From Haliotis rubra (Eukaryota): 64,000 bases of DNA. Position 1 is the first letter of the stretch. Each line of letters starts with the position of its first letter. The translations under genes were made by a program, and so were the position numbers. This document shows, one piece after another, positions 9,833-61,300 of the stretch. The notes under the pieces were generated by a model. It was not told where the DNA came from and made no database searches. It saw only the letters and a list, made by a program, of their open reading frames with translations. The stretch is taken from contig NW_025765431.1 in the NCBI RefSeq assembly GCF_003918875.1, forward strand, positions 62,001 to 126,000. Reading direction: 5' to 3'.

Positions 9833-10018
9833 GTAACTGTGAAAGGGAGGTAACTTTTGAACGTCTATTTGTCAATGTTATCTCGTCGACTGTCCGCACG
9901 TTTTATGATAATGTTAAGCAAGATTCGTTATTGTTGACTCAATAAGTTGTGTGTTTCATGATGAAGAGTAACCACAGTCGAGTAGAGTAAACGTGCGATC
10001 CTGAATCCATACTGCTAG

Positions 10019-29752: not shown

Positions 29753-29932
29753 GTGAGCTGTACAGGTAGTGTGAGTGAGTAATGATATTAACCTCTTTTG
29801 GCAATATTCCAAAACATCACGGTGGGGAACACCTGAGATGGGCTTCACGCAGTGTGGAGAATCGAACTGGGGCCTCCGACGTAACCAGTGAACATACACC
29901 TATCGACTGTAACCAATTTCTAGTGTTTTATG

Positions 29933-39488: not shown

Positions 39489-40170
39489 GAATGAATGAAT
39501 GAATGAATGAATGAATGAATGAATGTCTTTATTTCCTCCAGATAGGTCCGAAGATCCTCAAAACATCATGGTTATATAATTATATAATTAACAGAATACT
39601 CAACAAACATACACACACACACAAATATATATATACATAAACATACATAGAATATGGGAACATTTCCCCAAATATATACAGGTTATTAGCAGTCAGGTAT
39701 TGGCTAGATTATTACCACAGGTAATTGAGGATATCTTTTAGTTTATACAAATACTTTGAGAATTCTAAAATAGTGAAATGCCTTGTTATTTCATCAATAT
39801 CATTGTTATTGGCCCCAAGAAAGAATGCCAGCATGTCATGCTCTTCCATCATCTCTATATTGATATACATGTCAATATCAAGATTATCGATTAGAGTTGA
39901 GAAAAATACATCTCTCTCTGAAAGTAGAGATGCACAGTTTAGCACAACATGGTGATAGAAATCGTTAGCGAATGTATTACATTTTTTACATTCTTTTGAT
40001 AGTTTGCTTCCGGATCCAATCCTTATTACATATTGCAATTCTTCTCTCAGTTCTGGATATAACAATACCATGCTGTAAAACGCATGAGGTGAAAGTGCTG
40101 TATGGATTTTAGAATATCTAGACAAGTCATACCGCTTGCGAATATCGATGTTGATAGTGTCATGACAATG
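39489..40170 (-). mobile_element. 5'-truncated non-LTR retrotransposon (LINE) 3' end
   Basis: ORF 39712-40125 carries a C-terminal CxxC...H...C zinc knuckle (CKKC...HVVLNC), followed by AATAAA and a (CATT)n tail; it interrupts a type-2 retroposon head. Confidence 0.7.
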
Positions 40171-41952
40171 TTATGTGTAAGTCCTTTGTGTATATCATTG
40201 AATATGATGAAAACTTAAACCTGCATATGTGTGTGAAAGTTACAGTACAAGCAAACTGTTCACCAAAATATACTCCCCATCAAATGTTTAGACCCACTGA
40301 AAACACTCACTATATGTGTGCGTGCGTGCGTGTGTGTGTGTGTGGTTACATCGAAGATTGATTTCACCACTAACTTCGGGGAACCAACTGCAAACCTTAT
40401 GCAAATTAATTGCACGAGGATCATGCATCAAATTGTTGAAAAGCATGTCCAAATATTATGCATGTGAACAGTGCGTTTGGTGTAAAGTTTGGTTAAGAAT
40501 TCGCCAATTTTCACTGAGTTTTATCATTTGTTGAACTCAGGACAATAATCTTTGCAACTGTACGAATTTGTTTTGTTTTTGTTCATGTGTAAACAGTACC
40601 ATTAAACAGTATGGAATATTTTGCAAAATTTAGTTTAGAACAGTTGACTGCAGTAAGGGGCTATATTTACACTAGTGAGTCTAAACGTTTGATGGGAAGT
40701 ATATTATCTAGGAATATTTGGAATTCAGCGCGTTTACATCAATACCAGAATTGTTCCAAACGGCAAGAAATCGGTTTTTCAAGAATGAACAAAGTATGGT
40801 AGACACAGTTATCAGACATCTCATTTATCATTAACAGTTTATGAAGCTACACACTGCCATTCAAATTCAATTTAAACTTTCTACTATTCCCTTAACTAGA
40901 AATAAATGACAACAATTTGCTCCAATATCCCCTGTCATACTGAATTATTAATAGTCATTTTCAAAAGAGAACACCGCTTGTACTTTCTGAAAATGTGTTA
41001 ATGTGTACAACAGGAGCTGGGAATTTTGTAAACACGTTATGACAAATATATCACTTGTCAGGTTCTCAACATCCCAAAGTCTCCAAAGTCTCACGACATT
41101 TTCATGAAAACTGTGGAATGAAGTTAATTTCTCATTTACCCCGTCACTTCCAAGCATCAATAAGAGGAATTCACTTTTGACGTAGATTTACAATCCATAT
41201 AGCAAATTTTGGGGCAATTTAATCACTTTCCATTAAATTAAGCGTTAGTCATGGAATGTCGTACGTTGTGTTACAGTCTTCAATTAATTCCGTAATTAAT
41301 AAATATAATTATAATAAAGCCCAACCCAAACAACTTTGAACAGACACAATATGTTTTTGATCATCTGAATATCGTATCGGTGTACCTTGAAACTCTTAAT
41401 TTAAAATCTTTCAGTCCGTACAAATTGTAAACACGTTTATCATTCAAATATTTTAAGGTATCAAAATGCTTTTTAGATATTGGAAGAGGATTAAACGCTG
41501 TTATAGAATAGTTACCAAGCAGATATCATCCAGTGAGATTAAGTGCCCAGTTCTAATATAAAGACAAAGATGATATTGCATTATTAATAATTAGCTGTGA
41601 TAATGATAAAGATCATGTCAGGATATATTTTAAACTCACAATTGTGAATTATGTGCAAAAGTGGATCTCCAGGCAATGTGTTACAAATTACCTCATTGCG
41701 TCACTGATGATGCACGCTCGCGAATCATTTCTGGTAATATATTTCAGTTATATTACCGAACAATTGTTATATATGGTAATCCACGATGATGTGGTTCTCA
41801 TGTGATTGTGGGCGGCAGAACAGTCATATAGATTTTGTAATCTTCATACGCCTTTATACAAGATGGTTTTCGCCGTACATCTGTTACATGCTGAGGTATA
41901 CGTACGCTCAAAGAAGACAAGTTATATGATTCGGACACACTTGTTGTAAGGA

Positions 41953-42205
41953 ATGGCAACGTTCAGTTCTGTTGCAAAACTATCTTCGGCTGTGATAGTT
42001 TGCTTGACTTTGACGACTATTTTTGTTGGGTACTTTCACAAACAACAATACCGCTTTGAGTCAATAGTGAACACTGTCAGTTCACAAGATGTTCATTCAA
42101 GGGAGGTGCTGAATTTATTGAAGGACTCCCGCGAAGAATTCCAGGACTCACTGGGACAATACATGTCTGGAAATATAAAATTTGAGGATTTGCATCTTCA
42201 TAAAG
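41953..42205 (+). CDS. C1GALT1: Core 1 beta-1,3-galactosyltransferase (T-synthase)-like, copy A, coding exon 1 (type II TM anchor and stem)
   Basis: Short tail, TM segment AVIVCLTLTTIFVGYF, donor AAAG|gttagt, in frame with exon 2. Confidence 0.85.
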
Positions 42206-43297
42206 GTTAGTTTTAGTTGGCATTAAAGTCTTTCAATCAGTGAGTAGGTCTGTTTCACACCACTGTGAAATTTACGGAGAGCATGATTTAAATCTTATAT
42301 CCGCGTGAAAGAAAAATGCGCAGCTATATATTATTCATATGGAATAAGGAAGTTGCATATTAGATTAAGATATATGACGAGTACATTTAATTATGATTTA
42401 TTTAGAATAAATGTAAAACAATGACGCATCATGTCAATGTGACCATGCATGTAAGATTGTTTTTCATTACTTCCTTGAATGTCCGTTGTATGCTATACAA
42501 AGACATAAACTGTAAAAATCTTTATAAAATATTGCTAACAATAGAACACTTATTGGTATAAATCTTATCATACATGGCAATGCAGGTCTCTCAATGATTG
42601 GAAACCAGAATGTTTTCAGATATGTACATATCTATATTTCTCAAACAAAACTTTTTCTCATCATCTGTTGTACATATCCTAGCCTATGTCTGCCACTTAT
42701 GTACATTGTTGTAAGATGAATTGTGTAATTATTAGGAGAGGGCTTTTCTAAGTTGAATAACTTGTGCCCAATACTTTTCTTGAATGGATAAAATATGTTT
42801 CAATTCAATAATTGCGCGCTATGTATATGCTATGAATGAAACCCTGAAACAACGCAGGCCAAGTATATTTACCACTTTATTAATTCCATGAAGTCACAAA
42901 ACAGCTGACACACCAAGAAGTTGATTGCTAAAGACCAACTAATCCTAACACGGTAGGAACACGTGCAGGACGCCATTTGTTTCTGGATCTGGTAACACCT
43001 GGTACATCTATCATGTGGTGACCCTTTTCGTCTTAGATATATGACGAGACCTTATGTTTTACTTCAACGTTCACTCTCTATGCAAAATACATGTTTCCCC
43101 AAATTTCACTATGTGAGAAACCAATTTCTAGTCTCACCATAGTAGTCTTGCCATAATATCGCTACGTGTGGCGTAAAACGTTTTCACTCCACTCCATTCA
43201 CACGTTTCAAGCTTCTCTCTAATTCCTTCCTCGTCTTTGCATAGTTGCAATAATTCAAACCCTGTCGATGTAACTGATTCCTGCTTTATTTAAACAG

Positions 43298-43956
43298 ACA
43301 CTGATGCCATATCCAAGGCTCTATATCAGAAGGAGCGGGTACTCTGCTGGATTATGACGACACCAAAGAACCTGGATGTTAAAACACGTGTAGTTCGTGA
43401 CACGTGGAGTAGGCGCTGCAACAAAGTCCTCTTCATGAGCTCTGTGACAGATCCAAAGTTCCCTACAATCGGATTAAACGTGTCGGAAGGCCGAAGGCAT
43501 CTGACGGCCAAAACGATGCATGCTTTCCGCTACATCTACGAAAACCACTTTGATGATGCTGACTGGTTCATGAAGGCTGACGATGATACATATGTTATTT
43601 TAGAAAATCTCCGATACTTTCTGACGTCCCAAAACAAATCCGAACCTGTATTTTTTGGCCATCATTTTAAGACAATTGTCAAACAAGGGTACAATAGCGG
43701 CGGAGGGGGATATGTGCTGAGTAAGCAGGCACTGAGGCGATATGGGGAGAAGGGACACGATCCCAAACTGTGCCATCCTGATGGTGGTTCAGAAGATGCA
43801 GAGTTTGGCAGATGTATGGAGAACCTGGGGGTGAGGACGGTCAACACAACAGACGCCCTCGGGAGGAGCAGATTCCACTGTTTTACTCCTGAGATACACT
43901 TGGAGGGAGGCTACCCGAAATGGTATTACCAATACGATGCAAATGGTGCCAAGAAG
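43298..43956 (+). CDS. C1GALT1: C1GALT1-like copy A, exon 2 (GT31 catalytic domain)
   Basis: RVLCWIMT, TW..RCNK, DWFMKADDDTYV (DxD), SGGGGYVLS and EDxxxGxC motifs; AG/GT boundaries. Confidence 0.95.
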
Positions 43957-44826
43957 GTACGACAAACACAAAATATTCTTTTTCTCCTGTTGAAACCTGT
44001 ATCTATCTGATTAAAATCTGACAAAGCCTGTGTAGCAGTTAGTCAGGTGTATCATTCTATCAGCACTGGTTTCAGTTTTTGCAAGAATGAGAATAGATTT
44101 TCTTGAATTCTTGGAAACGAGAAACTGGTCGAGAGTATGATGTATACAGCCAATGGTCAGATGTTCATACAAAACATTATATATTATTATTATATATATG
44201 TTCATATTCACGGTAGATTATGACCATGATAACGTATATTCACATCTTAGCAAGTTGTGACAAGGTCGGTCTACAATGGTACACCCAGCCTTTTTAAAAC
44301 GCTGCCCTGACAAAGAAAGCTGTTTAAACCGGAAATTCCAAGCAAACCACCCCTGCACAGCTCAGCTTTCTCAACAGGGAAGGTAACGATGGTGTCACGC
44401 TCTGTGTACATCGAGGGGAATCATGTATTCGAACAGACACAGTAACACTTCGATCAGCTAAATATTTATCCTCATATTCCAGTCTCCTTAATCTTCAGGA
44501 AAGAACTACTGAATACAGCCATATAACAGTATGACGCCTGTATCCATCTATCGAGCATATCTACAATTCCTATAACTACTGGCTGGGTGTTTGGATCCCT
44601 ACGTCCATTAGATGGTACTCTGGAATCAGTATCGACCGGTCAAGTATCATGGCGGGGGACACCAGATATGGGCTTCACACATTGTACATTGGGGAATAGA
44701 ACACGGGTCTTCGGCGTGACAAGCGAACGCTTTAACCACTAGGCTACCCCACCGCCCCTTATCAACACAAAAGTATCCACTCAATATTCACATTGTTATC
44801 CACCCTTTTGTTAGGGAGTATCTCTC

Positions 44827-44860
<34 letters not shown>

Positions 44861-45621
44861 CCTCTCTATCTCTGTTGTGTTTTAATGATAATTCATCGTG
44901 ATAAAAACTGGTCACAGGATTGATAAACATATTTTGTAACAGCTGGTCAAGTTCAGTGACATAAGATTGACACCACTGATATGAGCACTTCGTTCGCTCT
45001 TGTATATCCACCAGTCCATTGTGATGATATATCAACCCAATTTATGAAAATCAGATATGATATTAATGTTATAACGAGTATGAACCATCAAATACTCAGA
45101 AGTAGAACGACCGGTGAAGATCCAGGTTTGAATATTGATCTTCAGTAACCCATGCTTGTCGTAAGAGTCGACTAACGGGATTTGGTGGTCAGGCTCGCTG
45201 ACTTGGTTGACACATGTCATCGTATTCCAATTGCGCAGATCGATGCTCATGTTGTTGATCACTGGATTGTCTGGTCCAGACTCGATTATTTACAGACCGC
45301 CGCTATACTGACTGACTGAGTTTGGTTTTACGCCGCTTTTAGCAATATTCCAGCAACATCACGGCGGGGAACACCAGAAATGGGCTTCACACATTGTATC
45401 CATGTGGGGATTCGAACCCGGGTCTTCGGCGTGACGAGCCAACGCTTTAACCATTAGGCTACCCTACCGCCCCTACCGCCGCTATATACCTGGACTATTG
45501 CTGAGTGCGGCGTAAAACTAAACTCACTCACTCAGTTCGTAACTCCTATTTACAATATGAAATCGACATCGGCGTATTCGTTAGCATAACGTAAAAGTCT
45601 CACGGAAAACATCTATTTCAG

Positions 45622-45801
45622 GGCGCAGACAGTGTTTCCGACTACGCCATCTCCTTCCACTACGTACCCCCACAGAAGATGTACTTTCTGGAGTTTTACA
45701 TCTACCACTTACGACCGTATGGCATAGTGTCCGGCACTCAGGAGCTCAACAGACATGTGAAGGTGAAACCAGGAACTTTGATACAACCACATGCGAAGTG
45801 A
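45622..45801 (+). CDS. C1GALT1: C1GALT1-like copy A, exon 3 (stop)
   Basis: tttcag|GGC; SDYAISFHYVPPQKMYFLEFYIYHLRPYG...AK*. Spliced CDS 1092 nt (363 aa). Confidence 0.92.
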   Translation, partial: GADSVSDYAISFHYVPPQKMYFLEFYIYHLRPYGIVSGTQELNRHVKVKPGTLIQPHAK

Positions 45802-46032
45802 CACTGAGAACGTCATTCGACTGATGACGTGTTCGACATCTAAGTTACATCACCTGCTTGGTGGTAGTCGTTTCACAGAGCGGCATTATAACCCTCTGTT
45901 CGACAACGTAATATCTCTTAGAATTATTGCTTTTAAACTGTTTCATTTTTGTACATTGTTGGGTTTATCTCGTTTGCATAATCGTGCTGTAATCATGTAT
46001 ATATTAACCGTCAGTTGTGCCGCAGCAACATA

Positions 46033-46264
46033 TACTCTTACAAAAAGTAGGGGAACCTGAACTTTGAATTTGGTTAGGAAGTATAAGCGTTAACCAACCT
46101 TTAAAAGACTGTACAAACAACTATGGTCATAAGGAAGTGCAAGTGGGGATGTACTCTCAAAACATTCATTATTATCATATCAACATTGAATTGACTACGA
46201 TATATCTCCCATTTTTGTCAACCGTAAATTAGAAATGAAGTTCCCCTACTTTTTTTGAAGAGTA
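46033..46264. mobile_element. Tc1/mariner-like MITE just 3' of C1GALT1 copy A (paralog at 57348-57579)
   Basis: ~24-bp inverted termini TACTCTTACAAAAAGTAGGGGAAC / GTTCCCCTACTTTTTTTGAAGAGTA with TA ends. Confidence 0.7.
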
Positions 46265-48483
46265 AATATTATGGCATTTACAACCTTATTTGGTTCTCCT
46301 CGTGGCCGTGTCTGTTATCACATTAATAATGACTAAAGGTATTTCCAAATAGGCTTGAGATCTCGCATGGAAACGATTCATTCATTGAACTAATTCCCAG
46401 TTTGTTTGTTGTTTAATGTCGTACTAGACAATATTCCAGCTATAAGGTGGCGGTGTGTAAATAATCAAGTCTGAACCAAACAATCGAGTGATCACCAGCA
46501 TGAGCATCGGTCTGTGCAATTGGCATACGATGACATGTGTCAGCCAAGTCAGCGAGCCTGACTATCCGACCCGACAAGCATGGGTTGCTGAAGGATATTG
46601 CTGTGTGCTGCGTTAAACAACAAACAAAACACTGTTTGCCAGCTCTAACAACAAGCACAAGTTTCTGAAGACCAGTTGTGGAGTGGAAATATAAAGGAGA
46701 TTATGTTTTGTATATTTATATAAATAAAAGCATCCCCAGGAACATGTAAATGCAGGTATTACAGATATATCCGACAAACGTAGAAAGTCTTTGTACGTTT
46801 ACGTTTACTTTTTACTTCGTCGTAAGAGTGAGTAGGTGAGTTTAGTTTTACGCCGCAGTCAACAATATTCCAGCTATATGGTGGCGGTCTGTCTGGACCA
46901 GACAATCCAGTGACCAACAGCATGAGCATCGATCTACGCAATTGGGAACCGATGACATGTGTCAACAAAGTCAGCGAGCTTGACCACCCGATCCCGTTAG
47001 TCGCCTCTTACGACAAGCTTTGGTTACTGAAGATCAATATTCTAACCGGATCTAACCGGATCTTCACGGGTACTTCGTCGTAAGATGTTGCCCTGGACAT
47101 CTTCGGTTTTAACAAAGAACTGAATACCTTATTCGTATTTCATCGTGTCGGATGTCATTTGGTTACAAGTTCATTTCGAAACAAAATGCTTTTATCACTT
47201 TTTTGAATCATATGATCGGGATGTCCATAAACCGACTTGTAGTTCCATGTTTAACGGAGATGTATGTCAGATGATGAGTGTATGGATGTGAGAATGTATA
47301 TAGTATTATACGGAGGTCGGCAAAGAGGGGGCAAGCGTGACTGGCTTTTGTGACGAAGGGAAATGGTCACAGGAAATGGAACGACATATGGCCGTCTTGA
47401 CAAAATGTATTTATCTGTTAAAAGGAAGTAGATTTACCGGTCAGTAGACTTTCATCCCTGTCCCTTACTGTGGCACAAATGTAATCATTTCAACGCGACA
47501 TTGTGATTACTGTGTTTGAAACTCAGTGTTATTCATGATTACCATTTCGCGATTACCATATATGGAATTAAATCTATTAATAGTGGAAAAAAGAGTTAAT
47601 TTTTAAGCAAAGTTTGCGTTCTATGAAAAACGCTACTGTATTGGATTTCGAAACACTATTGTGGCGGAGGGTAAGCCAAGTGGTTAAAGATCCGGGTTTA
47701 ATTCCGCTTATGGGTACAATGTGTCAATCCCATTTCTGGTGTCCCCCGCCGTAATATTGTTGGAATATTGCTAAAAGCGACGGAAAACCATATTCACTCA
47801 CACGAAGGACTATCGGCCCACTACTGTGTACGGATCCGCTGATTGTTAGGTTTATTCCTCAGTTCGATGCCCACTATAATCCTTGCTCTGTAGGCACTGT
47901 GCTCATGTATATATGACTTCATCAAATATCGTAGGAAGGAATAATATATTACCCTCCATGTTGTAACCTCAGAGGTGGTCTTCTCCAATACGTTCCGTGT
48001 TTGAGTCAATAAGCGATTTTCTCTGTTACTTTTTATCGTTTTAAGTCAAATGTATTAGTTTTGTAAAACTCATGCCTGAATGTCAGTTTTTGAAACAACA
48101 TGTACTCAGCTGTATTGTACTGTACATAGCTTTTTGTGAAAATTCAAAATACCATTTCTGTCTGAATCTCTGCCTGTCTGTCACGCCTTTGTATTGACGG
48201 TCACGCCTCTGTGATAATTAAATTTAGATTGTTGGGTTTGTACGTATCAATCAGCAATCAAGGTGATCAATATAGAACGGAAATATGGAAGTGATGCCCA
48301 CTTGCTTGATAACGGTGTTAATATCTACATCAAAACGTCGCATGCATTGCAATAAAGAAGTTGATTATCCACAGAACTTAGTTTTTCTTCATCTTTACAA
48401 CAGATCTTCTAAAATGCATCTCATAGAATAACAACACTATAAAGTATCTAAAATCACGAATCACCATACATAACTGTACCTCG

Positions 48484-49305
48484 GAAACCTATGCTAGTCG
48501 TTAGAGGCGCACTGATGGATCAGTGAGATTATAGGGATAGAGCTGGTTCCCAACAACCTGTGTTGGTCGTAAGTCGCGAAAACATGGATCCGAGAGGTTT
48601 CTTGGAAAGGGCTGGTTCCCAACAACCCGTGTTGGTCGTTAGCCACGACTGGGTGGATCCTTGAGATTTCAGAGATAAGAATTGATGGTCGTTAGCCACG
48701 ACTGGGTGGGTTTCAGGAATAGGACTGGTCCCCAACAACCTGTATTGGTCGTTAGCCACGATTGGATGGATCCTTGAGATTTCAGAGATAAGACTTGTTG
48801 GTCGTTAGCCACGACTGGATGGATGTCAGGTTTCAGGAATAGGACTGGTCCCCAACAACCTGTATTGGTCGTTAGCCACGATTGGATGGATCCGTGAGAT
48901 TTCAGAGATAAGACTTGTTGGTCGTTAGCCACGACTGGATGGATGTCAGGTTTCAGGAATAGGACTGGTCCCCAACAACCTGTATTGGTCGTTAGCCACG
49001 ATTGGATGGATCCGTGAGATTTCAGAGATAAGACTTGTTGGTCGTTAGCCACGACTGGATGGATATGTCAGGTTTCAGGAATAGGACTGGTCCCCAACAA
49101 CCTGTGTTGGTCGTTAGCCACCATTGGATAGATCCGTGAGATTTCAGAGATAAGACTTGTTGGTCGTTAGCCACCATTGGATGGATCCGTGAGATTTCAG
49201 AGATAAGACTTGTTGGTCGTTAGCCACGACTGGATGGATATGTCAGGTTTCAGGAACAGGACTGGTCCCCATCAACTTATGTTGGTCGATAGCAGATGGA
49301 TCCGT
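48484..49305 (+). repeat. Compound tandem repeat (~120-bp period) derived from the type-2 retroposon head; shorter paralog at 60158-60572
   Basis: Recurring GGATCCGTGAGAT...CCCAACAACCTGTRTTGGTCGTTAGCCACGA units. Confidence 0.85.
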
Positions 49306-50231
49306 GGGAACTTTGTACCCATGTGGGGATTCGAACCCGTGTCTTCGGCGAGGCGAGCAGACGCTTTACCACAGGGCTACCCCACCGCCCCTGGTGGAAA
49401 GGGGCGACGTGGCTGATGTGTGGGCTTCCAATTGGTCAGTATCGGCAACGTTGCTATTGTGTGTCAAAATAGTGTATCATGATTACGTATAATATCAATA
49501 CCTTGGTTGTGTGGAACCGGCTCGATTATTTACAGGCCTGCCGCCGTGTACCTGTGTAACGAGGTGAGGTGAGGTGAAATTGGGTTTTACGTCGTGCTTG
49601 AGAATATTTCGCTCATATGACGACGTGCATGCGTGTGTATGTGCATGTGCGGCTGCTTGTACTAGCCCAGACTTAAGCTGGTTTTATAGTGCTAGCCCAC
49701 TGAGATACCATGCCGCAGTGAAGCATGAATACCCCACTCAGACACATTATACTGACTCCGAGCCGACCAGTTCTTGTTGTACCCATTAATGCCGAGCGCC
49801 AGACAGGGACCAACAAGTACCATATTTTAACGTCTTTTGGTATGACGCGGTCGGGGATCGAACCCGCGACCTTCTGCTCTCCGGGCGGACGCTCTAATCA
49901 CTACACTACGGAGGCGGTCCACGTGTGCAATGAAGCGATCTTTAAACTTTCTTTAAGTATGAACAGAGAGTGATCCTCATCCATTCTGTGAGTCCATACT
50001 GTGAGGACAATTGTATTTCAAGTAAAGTAAACCATCTTAGAATTAAACACAGTACATTTGTTGGCAGTCTTCTAAATCGTCTGGAACTCAATTTGCGAAG
50101 CATGGATGCATGATAAGTATTTTATGTGCGCTTCGTTGATTATGTCGACTAGATAAAGGGACGTAACACCAAGCACCAGTCGAACCCTCTTCAATTTTGT
50201 GTTCTTACTATTGCTGTCTCTTTATCCTCAT

Positions 50232-50582: not shown

Positions 50583-53545
50583 ACAATAATTACATTAATC
50601 ATGTTATAAAAATTAAGGGGGTCTTCTGGTTCTCTAATATGCGACATAGTATTTATATATGGAACCCTTACATTGCCTTAGAGCTGCAACTTTTAACATT
50701 AATATTATATATTATGACTTCTTGACATTCTTGTTTTATTTCCAAAGAACTCATAATGACTACAAACCCTTATGTAGAACTTCAATTCTGCTCTCAAACA
50801 ATACAGTAATAGGAATACAATGTATGTGATTATTTTCACATTTATCAACAATTCATGCATTGAGAATACATTTATTTTACAGTTTGTATCTTTACAACTA
50901 CAACTCGTTGGAGGATCCAAGGGGGGTTCAAGGGGTTCGAACCCACCCCACCCCCATTGAAAATTCCTGGTATTTGTGTAAGTGTATCTGTTGGCTCAGA
51001 ATACTTAATTAAAGTAGGACTTGTTAATTCATACACACAGTACACGTGTCCTCTGCCTGCATAACTGTTCAAATTCTGTAGCCAAATGATCATGCGTGTG
51101 TAGGTGTATGTGCGGCTGCTTGTACTAGCTTAAGCTGATTTTATAATGCTAGCCCACTGAGATACCATGCCGCAGTGAAATATGAATTCCCCACTCAGAC
51201 ACATTATACTGACTCCAAGCCGACCAGTCCTTGTTTTACCCATTAATGCCGAGCGCCAGGCAGGGACCAACAAGTACCATATTTTAACGTCTTTTGGTAT
51301 GACGCGGTCGGGGATCGAACCCGCGACCTTCCGCTCTCCGGGTGGACGCTCTAACCACTACTCCACGGAGGCGGTCCCAAATGGCTTATATGACGAAGGT
51401 AGCAGTGTAGTGTACCTCAGTGCAACCAACCATAACCTTTGTTGTTTTAACGCGTCTAACTTTTGGGAGGACACCGACTTATCAAACCGGGTACCCATTC
51501 ACTGCTGGATGAACAGAGGCAATTCATGAACATACCTACTTGCCTAAGGTGAGACCTCATGTGTCACGTGTGCTTCGTCGTTGGGCAGGACTGAAGTCCT
51601 GTACGCGATCAACGTTGCTTAACTTCAAGTGATTAGTGCCCTGGACTCTATGCACAGGACCACACAGCACGACACCACTGGTAAAAAACCAGAAAAGTCC
51701 GGGAGCTTATGGTACACATAAAAATAGGTCATTTCCAGTGGGAGTCTGGACTTGCTTCATTTTTTAATTTTGCACTGGAGAAAGGGTTGGTTGGAAAAGA
51801 AAATGTTGAGGTTCTAGGACCACGCGACAGACTTCGCATGTGTAAGGTCCGAACGATGCAGAGCGAATGTTCTTCGTACAAAGAGGGAAATGCATTTAAA
51901 ACCCTACAAGTCAAAACATTGATTACACAACAATCTCGCTTCCTGGTGATTGGGTTCCGTCCTATTGCGCAACTTAGTACCATATCCAGTCCAGAATTTT
52001 GAGATCAACTCATTCAGTTTGATACATAAATATTAATCAGTATTATTTGACACATCTAACCGCTTGTATATTGCAACACTACGCTCCTTCTAGTCCTTGC
52101 AAACACGTCGTGTAGCGTGCTCTGTCGTACAGCGTGCTCTGACAAAAGGAAATCTGGAAATCTTAGAAATTTCAAAACGAGGCTCGGCCGCTAGAGATGT
52201 TTGGCGGTCTGGTACGGACTTGATATTATATCAATCACATTGTGCGTTGTATAACGACACTGAATAAGCGCAAAGAACACATAACAGGTGTTACCAGTGA
52301 GCCAGACGAATTTCTGAATCAATTTATGATCTCATCAACCAGGGTCAGTCTGTGACGTCTTAGTTAAGGCCATGCTGACTACACCTCGCCATAAAATATA
52401 GTAATACGATTAAAGTTTAAAATTAAAATTAACTTGTAAACACCATTTTCTTATGAAACAGGGAATTGGAATTCAGAGTAACCATAGTGTCTCGGTTTAG
52501 TTTTACGCCGCACTTAGCAATATTCCAGCTATATTGCGGCGGTCTGTAAATAATCGAGTCTGGACCAGACAATCCAGTGATGAGCAGCATAAGCATCGAT
52601 CTACGCAATTTGGATACGATCACATGTGTCAAACAAGTCAGCGAGCCTGACCACCCGATCCCGTTAGTCACCTCCTACGACAAGCATGAGTTACTGAAGG
52701 TCAATTCTGTCCCGGATCTTCACGGGTTTGGGAAACAGTGAATCTTTCTAACCATACCAATCCATTACATGTAGCTTCAGTGTCTTACAATTAGTTATAG
52801 CGCTGGTTATTGGTCACTGTGCCGTTTGCAGGACACGTATATAGATCTGGGCAAGCAGAAGCTTTACCTACATTTGTGCTGATCACAGCTGGTGACTTCA
52901 TAATTTCTATTGGAACAATGCATTTGACGACTGCCGGCCTGGCGGTGTTCATCTGGACGAGGTCTGCCAATATATATATACGAATGCAATTTTCTATAAT
53001 CCTATTTCTATTGCATCTAGGACGTCTGGAATGCCTATACTAACATGATATAACCGTTGATATTGGTGACACACATTGTGTTGCCTTTAAATACAAGATG
53101 GTTTGCGCCGTACATCTGCTACATGCTGAGGTATACGTACTCTCAAAGAAGACAATTTTTTTGATTCGGACACATTTGTTGTAAGGTATGTCATTTGGGC
53201 ATTTTGAAACGTGTGTTATTGAGATGTACTAATAGAAGGAACTTGGTCATTAAGGAAAATAACAGTGGGGGAAATTTCATTTCATTTTTCAATACATGCA
53301 ACTGAATAATTTGTTTCAATTAAGTTACTGTTTTCAGTGTATCTTGTATCACATTTGATAAATCTGTTGTTGTATTTCAGTCTGTTTCAACGATCGGCGG
53401 TTCACTTTGATTACTTTTTTTTGTTTGGGGTTAAAAGGCGATACCGATACCGTGGCAACCGAGGATCAACCGGCAGGTGCCACAGATCTACAGGCTGTCT
53501 GAAAGATTGAAATATCGACACTTCACCAGTAACACAACTTTTGGA

Positions 53546-53798
53546 ATGGCCACGTTCCGTTCTGTTGCAAAATTATCTGCGGCTGTGATTGTTTGCTTGA
53601 CTTTGACGACTATTTTTGTTGGGTACTTTCACAACCAACAATACCGCTTTGAGCCAATAGTGAACACTGTCAGTTCACAAGATGTTCATTCACGGGAGGT
53701 GCTGAATTTATCGAAGGACTCCCGCAAAGAATTCCAGGAGTCATTGGGACAATACATGTCTGGAAATATCAAATTTGAGGATTTGCATCTTCATAAAG
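53546..53798 (+). CDS. C1GALT1: C1GALT1-like copy B, coding exon 1
   Basis: Paralog of 41953-42205, same 253-nt length, 7 amino-acid differences. Confidence 0.85.
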
Positions 53799-55713
53799 GT
53801 TAGTTTTAGTTGGCATTAAAGTCTTTCAATCAGTGAGTAGGTCTGTTTCAAACCACTGTGAACAGGCTCTTAGCTAATTTACTGAGAGCATGATTTAAAT
53901 CTTATATCCGCTTGAAAGAAAGATGTGCACCTATATATTATTCATTTGGAATAATCTCTCTAAATATTCTATTTCAGTGTCAAGTGTTCTCGTCATGATA
54001 TGGCTGAAATATTGCCGATGTGACGTTAAATAATAACTCACTCACTCACTCATATGGAATAAGGAAGTTAAATGTTTTGCACATTAGATTAAGATATATG
54101 ACGAGTACACTTAATTATGATTTATTTAGAATAAATGTAAAACAATGAGGCATCATGTCAATGTGACCATGGATGTAAGAATGTTTTTCATTACTTCCTT
54201 GAATGTCCGTTGTATGCTATTTAAAGACATAAACTGTAAAAATCTTTATAAAATATTGCTAACAATAGAACACTAATTGGTATTAATCTCATCATACATG
54301 GCAATGCATGTCTCTCAATGATTGAAAACCAGAATGATTTCAGATATGTACATATCTATATTTCTCAAACAAAACTTTTTCTCATCATCTGTTGTACATA
54401 TCCTAGCCTATGTCTGCCACTTATGTACATTGTTGTAAGATGAATTGTGTAATTATTAGGAGAGGGCTTTTCTAAGTTGAATAACTTGTTCCCAATACTT
54501 TTCTTGAATGGATAAAATATGTTTCAATTCAATAACTGCGCGCTATGTATATGCTATGAATGAAACCCTGAAACAACGCAGGCCAAGTATATTTACCACT
54601 TTATTAATTCCATGAAGTCACAAAACAGCTGACACACCAAGAATTTGATTGCTAAAGACCAACTAATCCTAACACGGCAAAGGGATGTAACTGTGCACAG
54701 TGAATTACAAAACTTCATATTGTGCCACCTTGATTTTCCACCAACACAGTTTTTCAACCCAATCTTCATTGCAGTCACAATGGCGGAAGTTAGAAAAACG
54801 GTCAGTGCTTACTATAGAGATTAAGCAAATTAGTTGAATCCAAACCTCTGCCATAACCTTAAGAAGACAGTCATTTGTACATATGTGGGATCGACATGAA
54901 GATGATGGGAAGGCATGTTTCCTGCATATTGTTCAATTCAATCAAGATAACAAATTATTCAACAGAATATTATACCCGCTGTGTTTGTTTAGAAGACCAC
55001 ATTACAGGACACATGGGAAACATGTAATTTTATGTAATAATACTTTGAATATAATCTACAGAAAACTTCTCGTAAAAGTTGCATTTGACACTTTCTAAAC
55101 ATGTAACGATTATTATAGGTGGCAACCTAACGTTAGGGGACTGCATTTTTTGCAAATATCTTTTTTGTTTTCGTTTCAATGTAAAAGTGTTTACATGTAC
55201 CTTCATGTTTCTCCGTGACTTAACAGGAAGCTATTTCTGATGTCACGGTGATCGCCTATTTAAAAAGATACCTATATAACTATCATTACTTTTTCATAAT
55301 AGTTTTGATCAACTCATTCCGGGCGTTGGTTCAATTGATGTAATGTCTGACAGGAGACGTAAGCATGTGAACACGTGCAGGACGCCATTTGTTTCTGGAT
55401 CTGGTAACACTAAAATCTGGTACATCTAAAATGTGGTGACCCTTTTCGTCTTAGATATATGACGAGACCTTATGTTTTACTTCTACGTTCACTCTCTATG
55501 CAAAATTTGTCCCCCAATTTCACTATGTGAGAAACCAATTTCTAGCCTCACCATAGTAGTGTTGCCATAATATCGCTACGTGTGGCGTAAAACCTTTTCA
55601 CTCCACTCCATTCACACGTTTCAAGCTTCTCTCTAATTCCTTCCCCTCGTCTTTGCATAGTTGCAATAATTCAAACCCTGTCGATGTAACTGATTCCTGC
55701 TTTATTAAAACAG

Positions 55714-56372
55714 ACACTGATGCCATATCCAAGGCTCTATATCAGAAGGAGCGGGTACTCTGCTGGATTATGACGACACCAAAGAACCTGGATGTTAAAA
55801 CACGTGTAGTTCGTGACACGTGGAGTAGGCGCTGCAACAAAGTCCTCTTCATGAGCTCTGTGGCAGATCCAAAGTTCCCTACAATCGGATTAAACGTGTC
55901 GGAAGGCCGAAGGCATCTGACGGCCAAAACGATGCATGCTTTCCGCTACATCTACGAAAACCACTTTGATGATGCTGACTGGTTCATGAAGGCTGACGAT
56001 GATACATATGTTATTTTAGAAAATCTCCGATACTTTCTGACGTCCCAAAACAAATCCGAACCTGTGTTTTTTGGCCATCATTTTAAGGCAAAAGTCAAAC
56101 AAGGGTTCAATAGCGGCGGAGGGAGGTATGTGCTGAGTAAGGAGGCACTGAGGCGATATGGGGAGAAGGGACACGATCCCAAACTGTGCCATCCTGATGG
56201 TGGTTCAGAGGATCTAGACTTTGGCATATGTATGGAGAACCTGGGGGTGAGAACGGTCAACACAACAGACGCCCTCGGGAGGAGCAGATTCCACTGTTTT
56301 ACTCCTGAGATACACTTGGAGGGAGGCTACCCAAAATGGTATTACCAATACGATGCAAATGGTGCCAAGAAG
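55714..56372 (+). CDS. C1GALT1: C1GALT1-like copy B, exon 2 (GT31 catalytic domain, GGGRY variant)
   Basis: Same motifs and 659-nt length as copy A; open frame and intact splice sites. Confidence 0.93.
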
Positions 56373-56936
56373 GTACGACAAACACAGAATATTCTATTTA
56401 TCCTTTTGAAACTTGTATCTGTCTGATTTAAAATCTGACAAAGCCTGTGTAGCAGTTGGTCAGGTGTATCGTTCGCTCTTGTATATCCACCAGTCCATTG
56501 TGATCATATATCAACCCAATTTATGAAAATCAGATATGATATTAATGTTATAACGAGTATGAACCATCAAATACCCAGAAGTAGAACGACCCGTGAAGAT
56601 CCGGGTTTGAATATTGATCTTCAGTAACCCATGCTTGTCGTAAGAGGCGACTAACGGGATTTGGTGGTCAGGCTCGCTGACTTGGTTGACACATGTCATC
56701 GTTTTCCAATTGCGCAGATCGATGCTCATGTTGTTAATCACTGGATTGTCTGGTCCAGACACGATTATTTACAGACCGCCGCTATATACCTGGGCTATTG
56801 CTGAGTGCGGCGTAAAACTAAACTCACTCACTCACTTAGAAGTAGGACAGTTCGTAACTCCTATTTACAAAATGAAATCGACATCGGAGTATTCGTTAGC
56901 ATAACGTAAAGGTCTCACGGAAAACATCTATTTCAG

Positions 56937-57116
56937 GGCGCAGACAGTGTTTCCGACTACGCCATCTCCTTCCACTACATATCCCCACAGGAGATGTACT
57001 TTCTGGAGTTTTACATCTACCACTTACGACCGTATGGCATAGTGTCCGGCACTCAGGAGCTCAACAGACATGTGAAGGTGAAACCAGGAACTTTGATACA
57101 ACCACATGCGAAGTGA
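56937..57116 (+). CDS. C1GALT1: C1GALT1-like copy B, exon 3 (stop)
   Basis: SFHYISPQEMYFLEFYIYHLRPYG...AK*; 180 nt. Confidence 0.92.
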   Translation, partial: GADSVSDYAISFHYISPQEMYFLEFYIYHLRPYGIVSGTQELNRHVKVKPGTLIQPHAK

Positions 57117-58140
57117 CACTGAGAACGTCATTCGACTGATGACGTGTTCGACATCTAAGTTACATCACCTGCTTGGTGGTAGTCGTTTCACAGAGCGACA
57201 TTATAACCCTCTGTTCGACAACGTAATATCTCTTAGAATTATTGCTTTTAAACTGTTTCATTTTTGTACATTGTTGGGTTTATCTCGTTTGCATAATCGT
57301 GCTGTAATCATGTATATATTAACCGTCAGTTGTGCCGCAGCAACATATACTCTTACAAAAAGTAGGGGAACCTGCGCTTTGAATTTGGTTAGGAAGTATA
57401 AGCGTTAACCAACCTTTAAAAGACTGTACAAACAACTATGGTCATAAGGAAGTGCAAGAGGGGATGTACTCTCAAAACATTCATTATTATCATATCAACA
57501 TTGAATTGACTACGATATATCTCCCATTTTTGTCAACCGTAAATTAGAAATGAAGTTCCCCTACTCTTTTTGAAGAGTAAATATTATGGCATTTACAACC
57601 TTAATTGGTTCTCCTCGTGGCCGTGTCTGTTATCACATTAATAATGACTAAAGGTATTTCCAAATAGGCTTGAGATCTCGCATGGAAACAATTCATTCAT
57701 TGAACTAATTCCCAGTTTGTTTGTTGTTTAATGTCGTACTAGACAATATTCCAGCTATAAGGTGGCGGTGTGTAAATAATCAAGTCTGAACCAAACAATC
57801 GAGTGATCACCAGCATGAGCATCGGTCTGTGCAATTGGCATACGATGATATGTATCAACCAAGTCAGCGAGCCTGACTATCCGACCCGACAAGCATGGGT
57901 TGCTGAAGGATATTGCTGTGTGCTGCGTTAAGCAACAAACAGAACACTGTTTGCCAGCTCTAACAACAAGCACAAGTTTCTGAAGACCAGTTGTGGAGTG
58001 GAAATATAAAGGAGATTATGTTTTGTATATTTATATAAATAAAAACATCATCAGGAACATGTAACTGCAGGTATTACAGATATATCCGACAAACGTAGAA
58101 AGTCTTTGTACGTTTACGTTTACTTTTACTTCGTCGTAAG

Positions 58141-58388
58141 AGTGAGTGAGTGAGTTTAGTTTTACGCCGCACTCAACAATATTCCAGCTATATGGCGGCG
58201 GTCTGTAGATAATGGAGTCTGGTCCAGACAATCCAGTGACCAACAGCATGAGCATCGATCTACGCAATTGGAAACTGATGACATGTGTCAACCAAGTCAG
58301 CGAGCTTGACCTCCCGATCCCGTTAGTCGCCTCTTACGACAAGCATGGGTTACTGAAGATCAATATTCTAACCCGGATCTTCACGGGT
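58141..58388 (-). mobile_element. Type-2 retroposon, full length
   Basis: 15-bp TSD TACTTCGTCGTAAGA. Confidence 0.9.
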
Positions 58389-61300
58389 ACTTCGTCGTAA
58401 GATGTTGACATGGACATCTTCGGTTTTAACAAAGAACTGAATACCTTATTCGTATTTCATCGTGTCGAATGTCATTGGGTTACAAGTTCATTTCGAAACA
58501 AAATGCTTTTATCACTATTCGAATCATATGCTCGGGATGTCCATAAACCGACTTGTAGTTCCAGGTTTAACGGGTATGTATGTCAGATGATGTACCAAGC
58601 TGAAATGATGGGTGTATGGATGTGAGAATGTATATAATATTATACGGAGGTCGGGGGCAATCGTGACTGGCTTTTGTGACGAAAGGAAATGGCCATAGGA
58701 AATGTAACGACATATGGTCGTCTTGACAAAATGTATTTATCTGCTAAAAGGACAGTACAGGAAGTAGATTTACCGGTCAGTAAATTCTTTTCATTCCTGT
58801 CCCTTATTGTGGAACAGATGTTAATTATTTCAACGCGATTTTGCGAATTCTGTGTTTGAAACTCAGTGTTATTAAAGAGCGATTACCATATGTGGAATGA
58901 AATCTATCAATAGTGGGGAAAAGAGATATTTTTTAAGCCCTGTTCTATTAAATACGCTTTTGTATCGGACTTTGAAACACTATTGTTCCGGAGGGTAAGC
59001 GGTTTAGTGGTTCAAGCGTTCGCTTGTCACGGGTTTTGTTCCCACCATGGGTACAATGTGTGAAGCCCATTTCTGGTGTCCCCCGCCATGATACTTGACC
59101 GGTCGATACTGATTCCAGAGACCCATCTAATGGACGTAGGGATCCAAACACCCAGCCAGTAGTTATAGGAATTGTAGATATGCCCGATAGATGGATACAG
59201 GCGTCATACTGTTATTTTGCTGTATTCAATAGTTCTTTCTGGTGTCCTCTGCCATGATACTTGACCTGTTGATACTGATTCTAGAGTCCCATCTAATGGA
59301 CGGAGGGATCCAAACACCCAGCCAGTAGTTATAGGAATTGTAGATATGCCCGATAGATGGATACAGGCGTCATACTGTTATTTGGCTGTATTCAGTAGTT
59401 TTTTCTGGTGTCCCCCGCCGTAATATTGTTGGAATATTGCTAAAAGCGGCGGAAACCCATCATGGGCTCACTCACACGAAGGACTATCGGCCCACTACTG
59501 TGTACGGATTCGCTGATTGTTAGATTTATTCCTCAATTCGATGCCCACTATCATCCTTGCTTTGTAGGCACTGTGCTAAGTAATATGATTTCATCAAATA
59601 TCGTAGGAAGGAATTGATTTATTCTGCTAATATATTACCCTCCAGGTGGTCTTTTCCAGTACGTTCCGTGTTTGAGTCAATAAGGGATTTTCTCTGTTAA
59701 TTTTTATTGTTTTGAGTCAAATGTATTAGTTTTGTACGCCAAATCATGTCTAAATGTCAGTTTTTGAAACAACGTGAACTCAGTTGTATTGTAATGTAGC
59801 TTTTATGAAAATTAAAAATACCATTTCTGTCTGAATGTCTGCCTGTCTGTCGATCAAGCCTTTGTATTGACGGTCACGCCTCTGTGATAATTATATTTAG
59901 ATTGTTGGGTTTGTACGTATCAATCAGCAATGAAGGTGATCAATATAAAACGGAAATATGGAAGTGATGCCCACTTGCTTGATAACGGTATCAGTATCTA
60001 CACCGAAACGTCGCATGCAGTGCAATAAAGAAGTTGACTATCCACAGAACTTGGTTTTTCTTATCTTTACAACAGTACTTCTAACATACATCTCAAAGAT
60101 GTTACAACACTATAAAGTATCTAAAATCGCGAATCACCACACATAACTGTACCTCGGCAACCTATGCTAGTCGTTAGAGGCGCATTGATGGATCCGTGAG
60201 ATTATAGGGATAGGGCTGGCTCCCAACAACCTGTGTTGGTCGTAAGCCGCGTAAACATGGATCCGAGAGGTTTCTTGGAAAGGGCTGGTTCCCAACAACC
60301 CGTGTTTGTCGTTAGCCACGACTGGGTGGATCCGTGAGATTTCAGAGATAAGACTTGTTGGTCGTTAGCCACGACGTGATGGATATGTCAGGTTTCAGGA
60401 ATAGGACTGGTCCCCAACAACCTGTGTTGGTCGTTATCCACGATTGGATGGATCCATGAGATTTCAGAGATAAGACTTGATGGTCGTTAGCCACGACTGG
60501 ATGAATATGTCAGGTTTCAGGAACAGGACTGGTCCCCATCAACTTATGTTGGTCGATAGCAGATGGATCCGTGGGAACTTTGTACCCATGTGGGGATTCG
60601 AATCCGGGTCTTCGGCGAGGCGAGCGGACGCTTTACCACTGGGCTACCCCACCGCCCCTGGTGGAAAGGGGCGACTTGGCTGATGTGTGGGGCTTCCAAT
60701 TGGTCAGTATCGGCAACGTTGCTATTGCGTGTCAGTGTATCATGACAGCATATAATATCAATACCTTGGCTGTGTGGAACCGACTCGATTATTTACAGGC
60801 CCGCCGCCGTGTACGTGTGTAATGAGGTGAGGTGAAATTGGGTTTTACGTCGTGCTTGAGAATATTTCGCTCATATGACGACGTGCATGCGTGTGTATGT
60901 GTATGTGCGGCTGCTTGTACTAGCCCAGACTTAAGCTGGTTTTATAGTGCTAGGTCAATGAGATACCATACCGCAGTGAAGCATGAATACCCCACTCAGA
61001 CACATTATACTGACTCCGAGCCGACCAGTTCTTGTTGTACCCATTAATGCCGAGCGCCAGGCAGGGACCAACAAGTACCATATTTTAACGTCTTTTGGTA
61101 TGACGCAGTCGGGGATCGAACCCGCGACCTTCCGCTCTCCGGGCGGACGCTCTAATCACTACACTACGGAGGCGGTCCACGTGTGTAATGAAGCGATCTT
61201 TAAACTTTCTTTAAGTATGAACAGAGAGTGTTCCTCGTCCCTTCTGTGAGTCCATACTGTGAGGACAATTGTATTTCAAGTATAGTAAACCATCTTAGGA

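What the first reader, a model, noticed from the sequence alone, without database searches (positions are those of the whole stretch)
56088..56993. C1GALT1 duplicates diverge mainly at active-site motifs (GGGGY to GGGRY)
Seen: in the 659-nt catalytic exon I count 9 amino-acid changes and 4 synonymous changes. Eight of the 9 fall in a ~47-codon window: FKTIVKQGYNSGGGGYVLSKQ to FKAKVKQGFNSGGGRYVLSKE, and EDAEFGRC to EDLDFGIC; three of these codons carry two substitutions. In exon 3 the only three changes are non-synonymous and follow the conserved FH (YVPPQK to YISPQE). The DxD region is identical. Established: the GGxG loop, the xED motif and the C-terminal His line the donor/acceptor pocket of GT-A/GT31 enzymes, and vertebrate Cosmc is a non-catalytic T-synthase homolog. 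Inference: copy B has altered sugar specificity, or has become a pseudo-enzyme or regulator, possibly under positive selection on mucus O-glycans.
Basis: partly seen in the sequence, partly recalled or inferred. Interest (0 to 1): 0.72.

Follow-up and report, generated by a model that had tools for sequence, protein, structure and literature searches.

The report
Diverging tandem T-synthase-like genes in abalone
Two young, intact tandem copies of an abalone T-synthase-like (C1GALT1-family) sugar-transferase gene differ mostly in one short stretch beside the substrate pocket, which suggests, without proving, that the copies are specialising; otherwise this is an ordinary pair of duplicated enzyme genes.

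Summary
Copy A (exons 41953-42205, 43298-43956, 45622-45801) and copy B (53546-53798, 55714-56372, 56937-57116) are intact 363-codon GT31 T-synthase-like genes. Exon 2 has 16 differences: 9 amino-acid changes, 4 synonymous changes and 3 double-hit codons. Eight of the 9 changes fall in 47 codons. Exon 3 has 3 differences, all non-synonymous.

The clustering exceeds chance (scan P about 0.0006-0.002). In the patch, non-synonymous change is about 3.5 times the non-coding divergence of 2.8% (10-11 seen, 3.0 expected). The rest of exon 2 is strongly conserved (1 seen, 11.5 expected), so neither copy is decaying.

The orthologous Haliotis asinina locus holds one gene, so the duplication is lineage-specific. 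Most catalytic-domain changes lie on B, including G222R, where 121 of 122 homologs have Gly. Copy A also changed: E228Q, at an equally conserved Glu, and V252A. Exon 1 adds 7 more amino-acid differences. DxD, xED and the C-terminal His are intact in both copies, so a Cosmc-like dead copy is not supported. No donor paralog for the patch was found.

Expression could not be tested. The letter that makes the Arg codon was seen in no read contig, which is uninformative here.

Best reading: divergence of substrate preference after duplication, confidence about 0.5. Modest interest.

The parts
41953..42205 (+). Copy A exon 1: ATG, membrane anchor and stem (codons 1-84 plus the first base of codon 85)
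   Evidence: tblastn of the N-termini of abalone homologs. GT donor at 42206 and an intact joined frame.
43298..43956 (+). Copy A exon 2: catalytic core (codons 85-304), with DDD, SGGGGY and EDAEFGRC
   Evidence: Pfam Fringe and Galactosyl_T. Flanked by AG and GT.
43726..43728 (+). Copy A codon 228, CAG (Gln). This state is derived in A; Glu occurs here in 121 of 122 homologs and in DmC1GalT1, B3GLCT and CHSY3
45622..45801 (+). Copy A exon 3: C-terminal His region (FHYVPPQK) and the stop codon
53546..53798 (+). Copy B exon 1: ATG, membrane anchor and stem. It has 13 nt and 7 aa differences from A
55714..56372 (+). Copy B exon 2: catalytic core. It has 16 nt differences from A (9 aa changes and 4 synonymous changes)
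55995..56003 (+). DDD (DxD metal and UDP-sugar motif) in copy B, identical in A
   Evidence: Aligned to Asp181-183 of DmC1GalT1.
56088..56228 (+). The divergent patch, codons 210-256 of copy B (A equivalent 43672-43812). It has 12 nt differences, 11 of them in non-synonymous codon changes. It spans the equivalents of Dm Tyr213, Tyr218, the G-loop, Glu254-Asp255 and Lys260
56124..56126 (+). Copy B codon 222, AGG (Arg), where A has GGA (Gly). This is the second 'x' of GT31 motif IV, GxxYxxS; Gly occurs here in 121 of 122 close homologs
   Evidence: Motif from PMC8022947. The first-position A is unique to B among the six paralog DNAs compared.
56208..56213 (+). Glu-Asp of the xED motif (the equivalent of Dm Asp255 is the catalytic base), intact in both copies. 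The two codons that follow differ (AE in A, LD in B)
56937..57116 (+). Copy B exon 3, with the C-terminal His codon at 56973-56975. Three non-synonymous differences at 56979, 56982 and 56991. Stop codon at 57114-57116
37389..50000 (.). Duplicated unit A of the tandem segmental duplication
   Evidence: Self-comparison of the window.
51091..61258 (.). Duplicated unit B of the tandem segmental duplication. The syntenic H. asinina locus holds one unit only

Best explanation
A and B are recent tandem duplicates found in this lineage but not in H. asinina. They belong to an abalone-only clade of T-synthase-like GT31 glycosyltransferases: type II Golgi enzymes with a GT-A fold that in characterised relatives make the core 1 O-glycan, Gal-beta1,3-GalNAc-Ser/Thr. 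Both copies are intact, and both are kept by purifying selection over most of the catalytic domain. Since the duplication, amino-acid replacements have accumulated faster than the neutral rate in one 47-codon segment. That segment forms the acceptor- and donor-facing side of the pocket: the strand and G-loop holding the equivalents of Dm Tyr213, Tyr218 and Gly224, and the helix start after the catalytic Asp. A few more replacements lie just after the metal-binding His. Most are on the B lineage (T210A, G222R, V252L, E253D, R256I, V319I, K323E, and perhaps I/N211K and Y216F). Two are certain on A (E228Q, V252A). The most likely meaning is that the two enzymes are diverging in which GalNAc-peptides they accept or which sugar they handle, with B the more derived copy. 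Shown here: the gene structures, the duplication, the counts, the polarity of changes, the local excess of non-synonymous change and the conservation of catalytic residues. Inferred: that the replacements alter specificity, and that selection rather than chance drove them.
For: - Intact genes: both have 363 codons and canonical splice sites.
- Family: Pfam Fringe and Galactosyl_T. The match to DmC1GalT1 7Q4I has E = 4e-66.
- Duplication: there is a single gene at the syntenic H. asinina locus, between the same flanks. A and B are sisters with 100/98 support inside an abalone-only clade.
- Neutral yardstick: non-coding A-B divergence is 60/2131 = 2.8%.
- Patch: 10-11 non-synonymous changes against 3.0 expected (P = 3e-4 before allowing for the choice of window), NG86 omega 1.15, against a long-term omega of 0.13-0.21 for the same segment.
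- Rest of exon 2: 1 non-synonymous change against 11.5 expected (P = 1e-4), omega 0.09. Both copies are therefore still constrained.
- Clustering scan P = 0.0006-0.002.
- The loop that varies most across the abalone clade (codons 281-296) is identical in A and B. The patch is therefore not simply the family's usual hot spot.
- Changed positions align with residues whose mutation matters in DmC1GalT1: Y213A lowers activity 25-fold and Y218A is inactive (PMC9065035).
- No protein among 5.8 billion matches the B patch better than the H. asinina ortholog does (84%). None of four paralog DNAs carries the eight B-unique nucleotides.
Against: - The numbers are small: 12 substitutions in the patch, and the window was chosen after seeing the data.
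- Whole-gene omega is only 0.48, and the patch omega of 1.15 is not significantly above 1 on synonymous sites alone.
- Fisher tests of the N:S ratio in the patch against the rest give P = 0.05 (whole CDS) and 0.12 (catalytic domain).
- Double-hit codons can come from multi-nucleotide mutations, which mimic positive selection.
- The polarity of 5 patch nucleotides is ambiguous.
- There is no expression evidence. No RNA run was found, and only assembled contigs could be laid.
- The B-specific A at 56124 was seen in no laid contig of four runs. A- and B-type contigs were also missing at the invariant site 56255, so this carries little weight.
- G222R could simply cripple B.
Confidence: 0.5

Rival explanations
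1. Local relaxation with no new function. After duplication one copy, mainly B, became redundant. Replacements drifted in at tolerant positions near the pocket, some as single multi-nucleotide mutations. G222R (with Y216F and I211K) weakens or kills catalysis, so B is a hypomorph on its way to becoming a pseudogene, or at most a non-catalytic binder.
For: - Patch omega is about 1, not clearly above it. Exons 1 and 3 evolve at about the neutral rate.
- Most changed sites vary among homologs.
- Two of the three double-hit codons involve adjacent bases.
- The family shows birth-and-death evolution: a pseudogenised exon 2 copy lies next to P0007 in H. rubra (L003 2921-3575, minus strand).
- Gly222 is otherwise almost invariant.
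Against: - The rest of exon 2 has 1 non-synonymous change where 11.5 are expected under neutrality. Neither copy has been free of constraint for most of the time since duplication.
- Patch dN exceeds the non-coding rate about 3.5-fold.
- There are no stops, frameshifts or splice-site losses.
- A also carries a change at an invariant site (E228Q).
Confidence: 0.27
2. Gene conversion. A short tract of about 140 bp was copied into B, or into A, from a third paralog of this large family. That would create clustered differences and double-hit codons in one event.
For: - Abalones carry many paralogs that are 80-90% identical, several of them in arrays.
- The differences are clustered and include multi-hit codons.
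- Neither A nor B is in the protein database, so this species' paralog set is not fully sampled.
Against: - No protein matches the B patch better than 84%.
- The eight B-unique nucleotides are absent from the four paralog DNAs examined.
- All paralog contigs laid from four runs read G, not A, at 56124.
- A tract from a paralog with dS of 0.3 or more should bring many synonymous differences, but the patch has 11 non-synonymous to 1 synonymous. My binomial estimate is P about 0.001 if 45% were expected to be non-synonymous.
- The patch differences split between both lineages.
Confidence: 0.1
3. Assembly artefact. A and B are two haplotypes of one gene wrongly laid in tandem, so the 'paralog divergence' is allelic variation.
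For: - Molluscs are highly heterozygous, and false duplications do occur in assemblies.
- Contig depths for A-type and B-type pieces in run X1 are similar, about 200. The genome-wide single-copy depth was not measured.
Against: - The window has no N runs.
- Both units keep their own flanks and a spacer of about 1.1 kb, with repeat copies at the unit borders.
- Each copy has private large indels: 688 nt in B intron 1, 938 and 179 nt in A intron 2, and different upstream deletions.
- Non-coding divergence is 2.8%.
- B-specific sequence, including the private insertion, occurs at 0 differences in read contigs.
Confidence: 0.06

Closest known systems
C1GALT1 / T-synthase (core 1 beta1,3-galactosyltransferase, CAZy GT31); solved structure Drosophila C1GalT1, PDB 7Q4I
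   Same: - Exon 2 aligns over 210 residues at E = 4e-66.
- It keeps the motif-I Trp, DDD, Ser-Gly-Gly, Glu-Asp (catalytic base), Trp and Tyr of the acceptor loop, and the C-terminal His-Tyr.
- It has type II topology, with an N-terminal hydrophobic anchor.
   Different: - Both copies belong to an abalone-only clade that is sister to the canonical abalone gene (P0011, P0012).
- SVSD replaces the CCSD hallmark.
- The equivalent of Tyr213 is Ile in A and Lys in B.
- B has Phe at the equivalent of Tyr218 and Arg at the equivalent of Gly224. A has Gln at the equivalent of Glu230.
- Activity is untested.
Characterised mollusc T-synthases (Pomacea canaliculata, Crassostrea gigas, Biomphalaria glabrata; PMC11005171)
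   Same: - Same family and same motifs.
- The Pomacea enzyme also lacks CCSD (it has TMSD) and is still active.
- EDV, EDA and EDL variants of the xED region are all seen in active enzymes.
   Different: - The A/B pair is a recent tandem duplicate from a lineage-specific expansion.
- No characterised mollusc enzyme carries Arg before the G-loop Tyr (109 of 110 non-abalone homologs have Gly).
Cosmc (C1GALT1C1), the non-catalytic T-synthase homolog and chaperone
   Same: It is a homolog from the same GT31 branch.
   Different: [quoted passage not shown] Invertebrate T-synthases are reported not to need Cosmc (same paper). The resemblance stops at homology.
Other Fringe-related GT31 enzymes with solved structures (B3GLCT 12EM; chondroitin synthase CHSY3 9Q8Z and 9O4G)
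   Same: They share GGxG[Y/M]xxS[R/K]E around the G-loop. The Gly replaced in B and the Glu replaced in A are both conserved in them.
   Different: They use different donors and acceptors, and their overall similarity is much lower (E = 1e-15 to 1e-10).

Membership tests
GT31 / Fringe-related glycosyltransferase (GT-A fold) | Match to the Pfam Fringe (PF02434) and Galactosyl_T (PF01762) models above their gathering scores | tested here: met
   A scores 51.6 and 29.3 bits; B scores 48.2 and 30.2 bits; the cut-offs are 21 and 23.
GT31 / Fringe-related glycosyltransferase (GT-A fold) | DxD metal-binding motif (motif II) | tested here: met
   DDD is present and identical in both copies.
GT31 / Fringe-related glycosyltransferase (GT-A fold) | Motif IV, GxxYxxS (C-terminal part of the G-loop) | tested here: met
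   A has GGGYVLS and B has GGRYVLS. The motif's G, Y and S are intact in both, and B's Arg is at the second x (motif from PMC8022947).
GT31 / Fringe-related glycosyltransferase (GT-A fold) | xED catalytic base and C-terminal His | tested here: met
   SED and FHY are present in both copies and align with Glu254-Asp255 and His324-Tyr325 of DmC1GalT1.
T-synthase (C1GALT1, EC 2.4.1.122) | Closest solved and annotated relatives are T-synthases, and the acceptor-contact residues are conserved (Dm Ser220, Asp255, Trp300, Tyr304, Tyr218) | tested here: inconclusive
   The best PDB hit is DmC1GalT1, and all best database hits are named C1GALT1-like. Ser, Asp, Trp and Tyr304 are kept. The equivalent of Tyr218 is Tyr in A but Phe in B, and the equivalent of Tyr213 is Ile or Lys. 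The genes sit in an abalone-only sister clade of the canonical gene.
T-synthase (C1GALT1, EC 2.4.1.122) | CCSD hallmark motif before the C-terminal His | tested here: not met
   Both copies read SVSD. The active Pomacea enzyme reads TMSD, so the motif is not indispensable (PMC11005171).
T-synthase (C1GALT1, EC 2.4.1.122) | Transfers Gal from UDP-Gal to GalNAc-alpha-Ser/Thr | not testable with these tools
   This needs recombinant enzyme assays.
Cosmc-like non-catalytic homolog | Loss of DxD and of motif I | tested here: not met
   Copy B keeps RDTW (motif I) and DDD.

The most novel reading that the evidence does not exclude
The two copies have each changed one residue that is otherwise invariant across the Fringe-related GT31 enzymes, six positions apart on the same G-loop and strand: Gly to Arg in B, Glu to Gln in A. 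They have also changed the equivalents of the peptide- and GalNAc-contacting tyrosines. This would mark a real switch of specificity within an abalone-only, birth-and-death family of T-synthase-like enzymes. One example would be a copy B whose new Arg in the donor/acceptor-facing loop accommodates a charged or modified sugar or acceptor, diversifying abalone O-glycans.
Probability: 0.15. Interest if true: 0.6.

Novelty: new member of a known kind. Interest (0 to 1): 0.35.

Why it matters
If the divergence is functional, this pair is a compact natural experiment. The copies differ at only 12 catalytic-domain residues, and several of those map to positions shown by mutagenesis to matter in Drosophila and human C1GalT1. 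Swapping them could show which residues of the G-loop and its neighbours set acceptor or donor preference in T-synthase-type GT31 enzymes, a question the GT-A literature calls largely open. It would also document how molluscs enlarge their O-glycan repertoire through lineage-specific expansion of core 1 synthase-like genes. If the divergence is not functional, this is a routine young duplicate pair.

Tried and rejected
1. Third paralog in the window. tblastn of the A protein against all 64 kb found only A and B. The apparent start of a third unit at 60825 is only the border repeat, because H. asinina's downstream flank resumes at 63553.

2. Donor for the patch. A patch-restricted protein search and nucleotide comparison with four paralog DNAs found none.

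3. Expression. The small 'RNA?' runs all hold the same 0.14 share of words, so they may be reduced-representation DNA (my guess). The single read-laying run returned contigs only, swamped by paralogs and an intronic repeat. It confirms B-specific flanks in X1 and B-type letters at 56066 and 56088-56093 in X2. It says nothing reliable about 56124.

4. The idea that the changes simply follow family-variable sites. Changed sites are not significantly more variable than unchanged ones in other molluscs (P = 0.19) and only marginally so in the abalone clade (P = 0.047). The most variable loop is identical in A and B.

5. A mosaic of A-B homogenisation. Non-coding windows range from 0.7% to 5.3%, about what noise around 2.8% would give, so there is no clear tract.

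6. B-only divergence. Rejected by polarisation.

7. Steps left out. Database searches were made exon by exon, by reference. I ran no database search, cluster look-up or structure prediction with the joined 363-residue models. I built no 3D model, because the tools return no coordinates with which to place the Arg.

Full report
**What is there**

The window is abalone DNA. The best protein hits are Haliotis asinina and H. rubra at up to 89% identity.

A self-comparison shows a tandem segmental duplication. Unit A runs from about 37389 to 50000 and unit B from about 51091 to 61258. Each unit holds one three-exon gene on the + strand:

| Copy | Exon 1 | Exon 2 | Exon 3 |
|---|---|---|---|
| A | 41953-42205 | 43298-43956 | 45622-45801 |
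| B | 53546-53798 | 55714-56372 | 56937-57116 |

- Both genes have GT..AG introns and an unbroken 363-codon frame.
- Both have an N-terminal hydrophobic anchor.
- Exon 2 matches Pfam Fringe and Galactosyl_T.
- Exon 2 also matches the solved Drosophila core 1 synthase, 7Q4I, at E = 4e-66.
- No other family member lies in the window.

**Check of the observation**

- Exon 2 has 16 nucleotide differences. They give nine amino-acid changes (T135A, T210A, I211K, Y216F, G222R, Q228E, A252L, E253D, R256I, written A to B in full-length numbering) and four synonymous changes.
- Three codons carry two hits (211, 222, 252).
- Eight of the nine changes lie in codons 210-256.
- Exon 3 has three differences, all non-synonymous, right after FHY.
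- DDD is identical in the two copies.

A scan statistic puts the probability of such clustering at 0.0006 (uniform placement or weighted by mollusc site variability) to 0.002 (weighted by abalone-clade variability). Three or more double-hit codons have P = 0.003.

**Origin of the pair**

- The H. asinina protein P0006 is the closest relative.
- Its locus (L001) lines up with the window on both sides: the short-chain dehydrogenase gene upstream and the sequence at 63553-64000 downstream. It holds a single gene.
- In a maximum-likelihood tree, A and B are sisters (support 100/98). Next come P0006 and P0004 of H. asinina.
- All of these sit inside an abalone-only clade, which is sister to the canonical-looking abalone gene (P0011, P0012).
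- The duplication is therefore lineage-specific and young. Non-coding divergence is 60/2131 = 2.8%. dS between A and B is 0.05, against 0.35 to H. asinina.

**Selection**

| Comparison (NG86) | omega |
|---|---|
| A-B, whole gene | 0.48 |
| Each copy against H. asinina, whole gene | 0.32-0.34 |
| A-B, exon 2 outside the patch | 0.09 |
| A-B, patch (dN 0.093, dS 0.081) | 1.15 |
| Each copy against H. asinina, same patch | 0.13-0.21 |

Using the non-coding divergence as the neutral yardstick:

- Outside the patch, exon 2 has one non-synonymous change where 11.5 are expected (P = 1e-4).
- The patch has 10-11 non-synonymous changes where 3.0 are expected. P = 3e-4 before allowing for choosing the window afterwards; by my estimate about 0.003-0.008 after a rough correction.
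- Exons 1 and 3 change at about the neutral rate.

So neither copy is a decaying pseudogene. One segment evolves faster than neutral, although the sample is small.

**Which copy changed**

I compared four outgroup DNAs: the exon 2 sequences of H. asinina P0006 and P0004, and two exon 2 copies from H. rubra locus L003 (P0007 and a neighbouring pseudogene).

- Eight nucleotides are unique and derived in B: 55863, 56066, 56124, 56210, 56214, 56219, 56227 and 56252.
- Three are derived in A: 43726 (E228Q), 43799 (V252A) and 43917.
- Five patch positions are ambiguous.
- Codon 252 is one step on each lineage from an ancestral Val.
- In exon 3, V319I and K323E are derived in B. P320S is ambiguous, because P0006 shares Ser with B while P0004 shares Pro with A.
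- B changed more, but not alone. The counts are 4 against 10 in the catalytic domain (P = 0.18). The tree branch lengths are 0.018 for A and 0.039 for B.

**Where the changes sit**

The alignment to DmC1GalT1 and the structure paper (PMC9065035) give this mapping:

| A/B position | DmC1GalT1 equivalent | Known role |
|---|---|---|
| 211 | Tyr213 | CH-pi contact with the acceptor peptide; Y213A lowers activity 25-fold |
| 216 | Tyr218 | Hydrogen bond to GalNAc O4; Y218A is inactive |
| 222 | Gly224 | In the glycine-rich loop that faces the donor and acceptor sugars |
| 252, 253 | Val256, Glu257 | Directly after the catalytic base Asp255 |
| 319, 320 | residues 326, 327 | Directly after the metal-binding His324 and Tyr325 |

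Among 122 homologs:

- Position 222 is Gly in 121, and B's Arg is unique.
- Position 228 is Glu in 121, and A's Gln is shared with one other.
- Both residues are also conserved in solved B3GLCT and CHSY3.

The remaining changed sites vary among homologs. Phe at 216 occurs in half of the abalone clade. EDA, EDV and EDL all occur in active T-synthases (PMC11005171). In the pan-GT31 motif IV, GxxYxxS, the Arg occupies the second x, and the conserved Gly, Tyr and Ser are intact (PMC8022947). The loop that varies most within the abalone clade (codons 281-296) is identical in A and B.

**Rival explanations**

  - No protein in the 5.8-billion-sequence database resembles the B patch more than the H. 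asinina ortholog does (84%).
  - No examined paralog DNA carries the B-unique bases.
  - All paralog contigs laid from four runs read G at 56124.
  - The 11:1 ratio of non-synonymous to synonymous differences is not what an imported tract from a diverged, functional paralog would bring.
  - It cannot be excluded, because this species' own paralogs are not fully sampled. A and B themselves are absent from the protein database.
- *Local relaxation with multi-nucleotide mutations, leaving B weakened.* This remains a serious rival.
- *Assembly artefact.* Unlikely, given private large indels, distinct flanks and B-specific read contigs.

**What could not be tested**

- *Expression.* No RNA run holding the exon was found.
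- *What the contigs do show.* B-specific sequence occurs at 0 differences in run X1, including the B-only intron insertion. B-type letters occur at 56066 and 56088-56093 in run X2, which comes from a different organism label.
- *What they do not show.* The A at 56124 that makes the Arg codon was seen in no laid contig. Because A- and B-type contigs are also missing at the invariant site 56255, this absence carries little weight. It should be checked in raw reads.

**Verdict**

The best reading is post-duplication divergence of substrate preference in a young tandem pair of T-synthase-like genes, with B more derived (confidence about 0.5). A Cosmc-like dead copy is not supported, because all catalytic landmarks are intact. 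This is a new member of a known kind, of modest interest. It would make a good small system for mutational swaps if both copies prove to be expressed.

Noticed in passing
window 41850-41955 (A) against 53083-53545 (B); A 39307-41890 against B 52900-53092: The two copies carry reciprocal upstream deletions relative to H. asinina. A lacks the 355 nt immediately upstream of its ATG (present in B at 53188-53542 and in L001 at about 9590-10000), and the breakpoint is flanked by a short GG microhomology. B lacks about 2.4 kb of more distal upstream sequence that A and H. asinina retain. This could mean the copies are regulated differently.
   Followed up: partly
window 56588-56838 (B intron 2) and 45132-45307 (A intron 2): A repeat of about 250 nt has more than 20 copies in the window. 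It reaches depths of a million or more in contigs of all four runs, from four organism labels, and it also occurs in H. asinina. It behaves as a SINE-like interspersed element.
   Followed up: partly
window 29918-34061: A 53-bp minisatellite with 78 copies (94% matches) spans 4.1 kb inside the region syntenic with the H. asinina short-chain dehydrogenase gene. The H. asinina locus has only about 350 nt of it (L001 3877-4225).
   Followed up: partly
L003:2921-3575 (minus strand), H. rubra QXJH01000095.1: An uncalled exon 2 copy of the same family lies next to the gene for P0007. It has an in-frame stop and a frameshift, so it is a pseudogenised paralog and evidence of birth-and-death turnover in the abalone array.
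   Followed up: partly
window 54681-55368 (B intron 1); 44052-44989 and 45296-45474 (A intron 2): Each copy has private insertions or deletions: 688 nt only in B, and 938 and 179 nt only in A. The 688-nt B piece has no other copy in the window.
   Followed up: no
window 48595-49253 and 60268-60560: Tandem repeats of about 120 bp lie downstream of each gene copy and are also present downstream of the H. asinina gene (L001 16443-17606). Copy number differs between units A and B.
   Followed up: no
window 56124: In contigs of four public runs, every laid contig reads G where the window has A, the first base of the Arg codon. True A- and B-type contigs are also missing at nearby invariant sites, so this is unresolved rather than contradictory.
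   Followed up: partly
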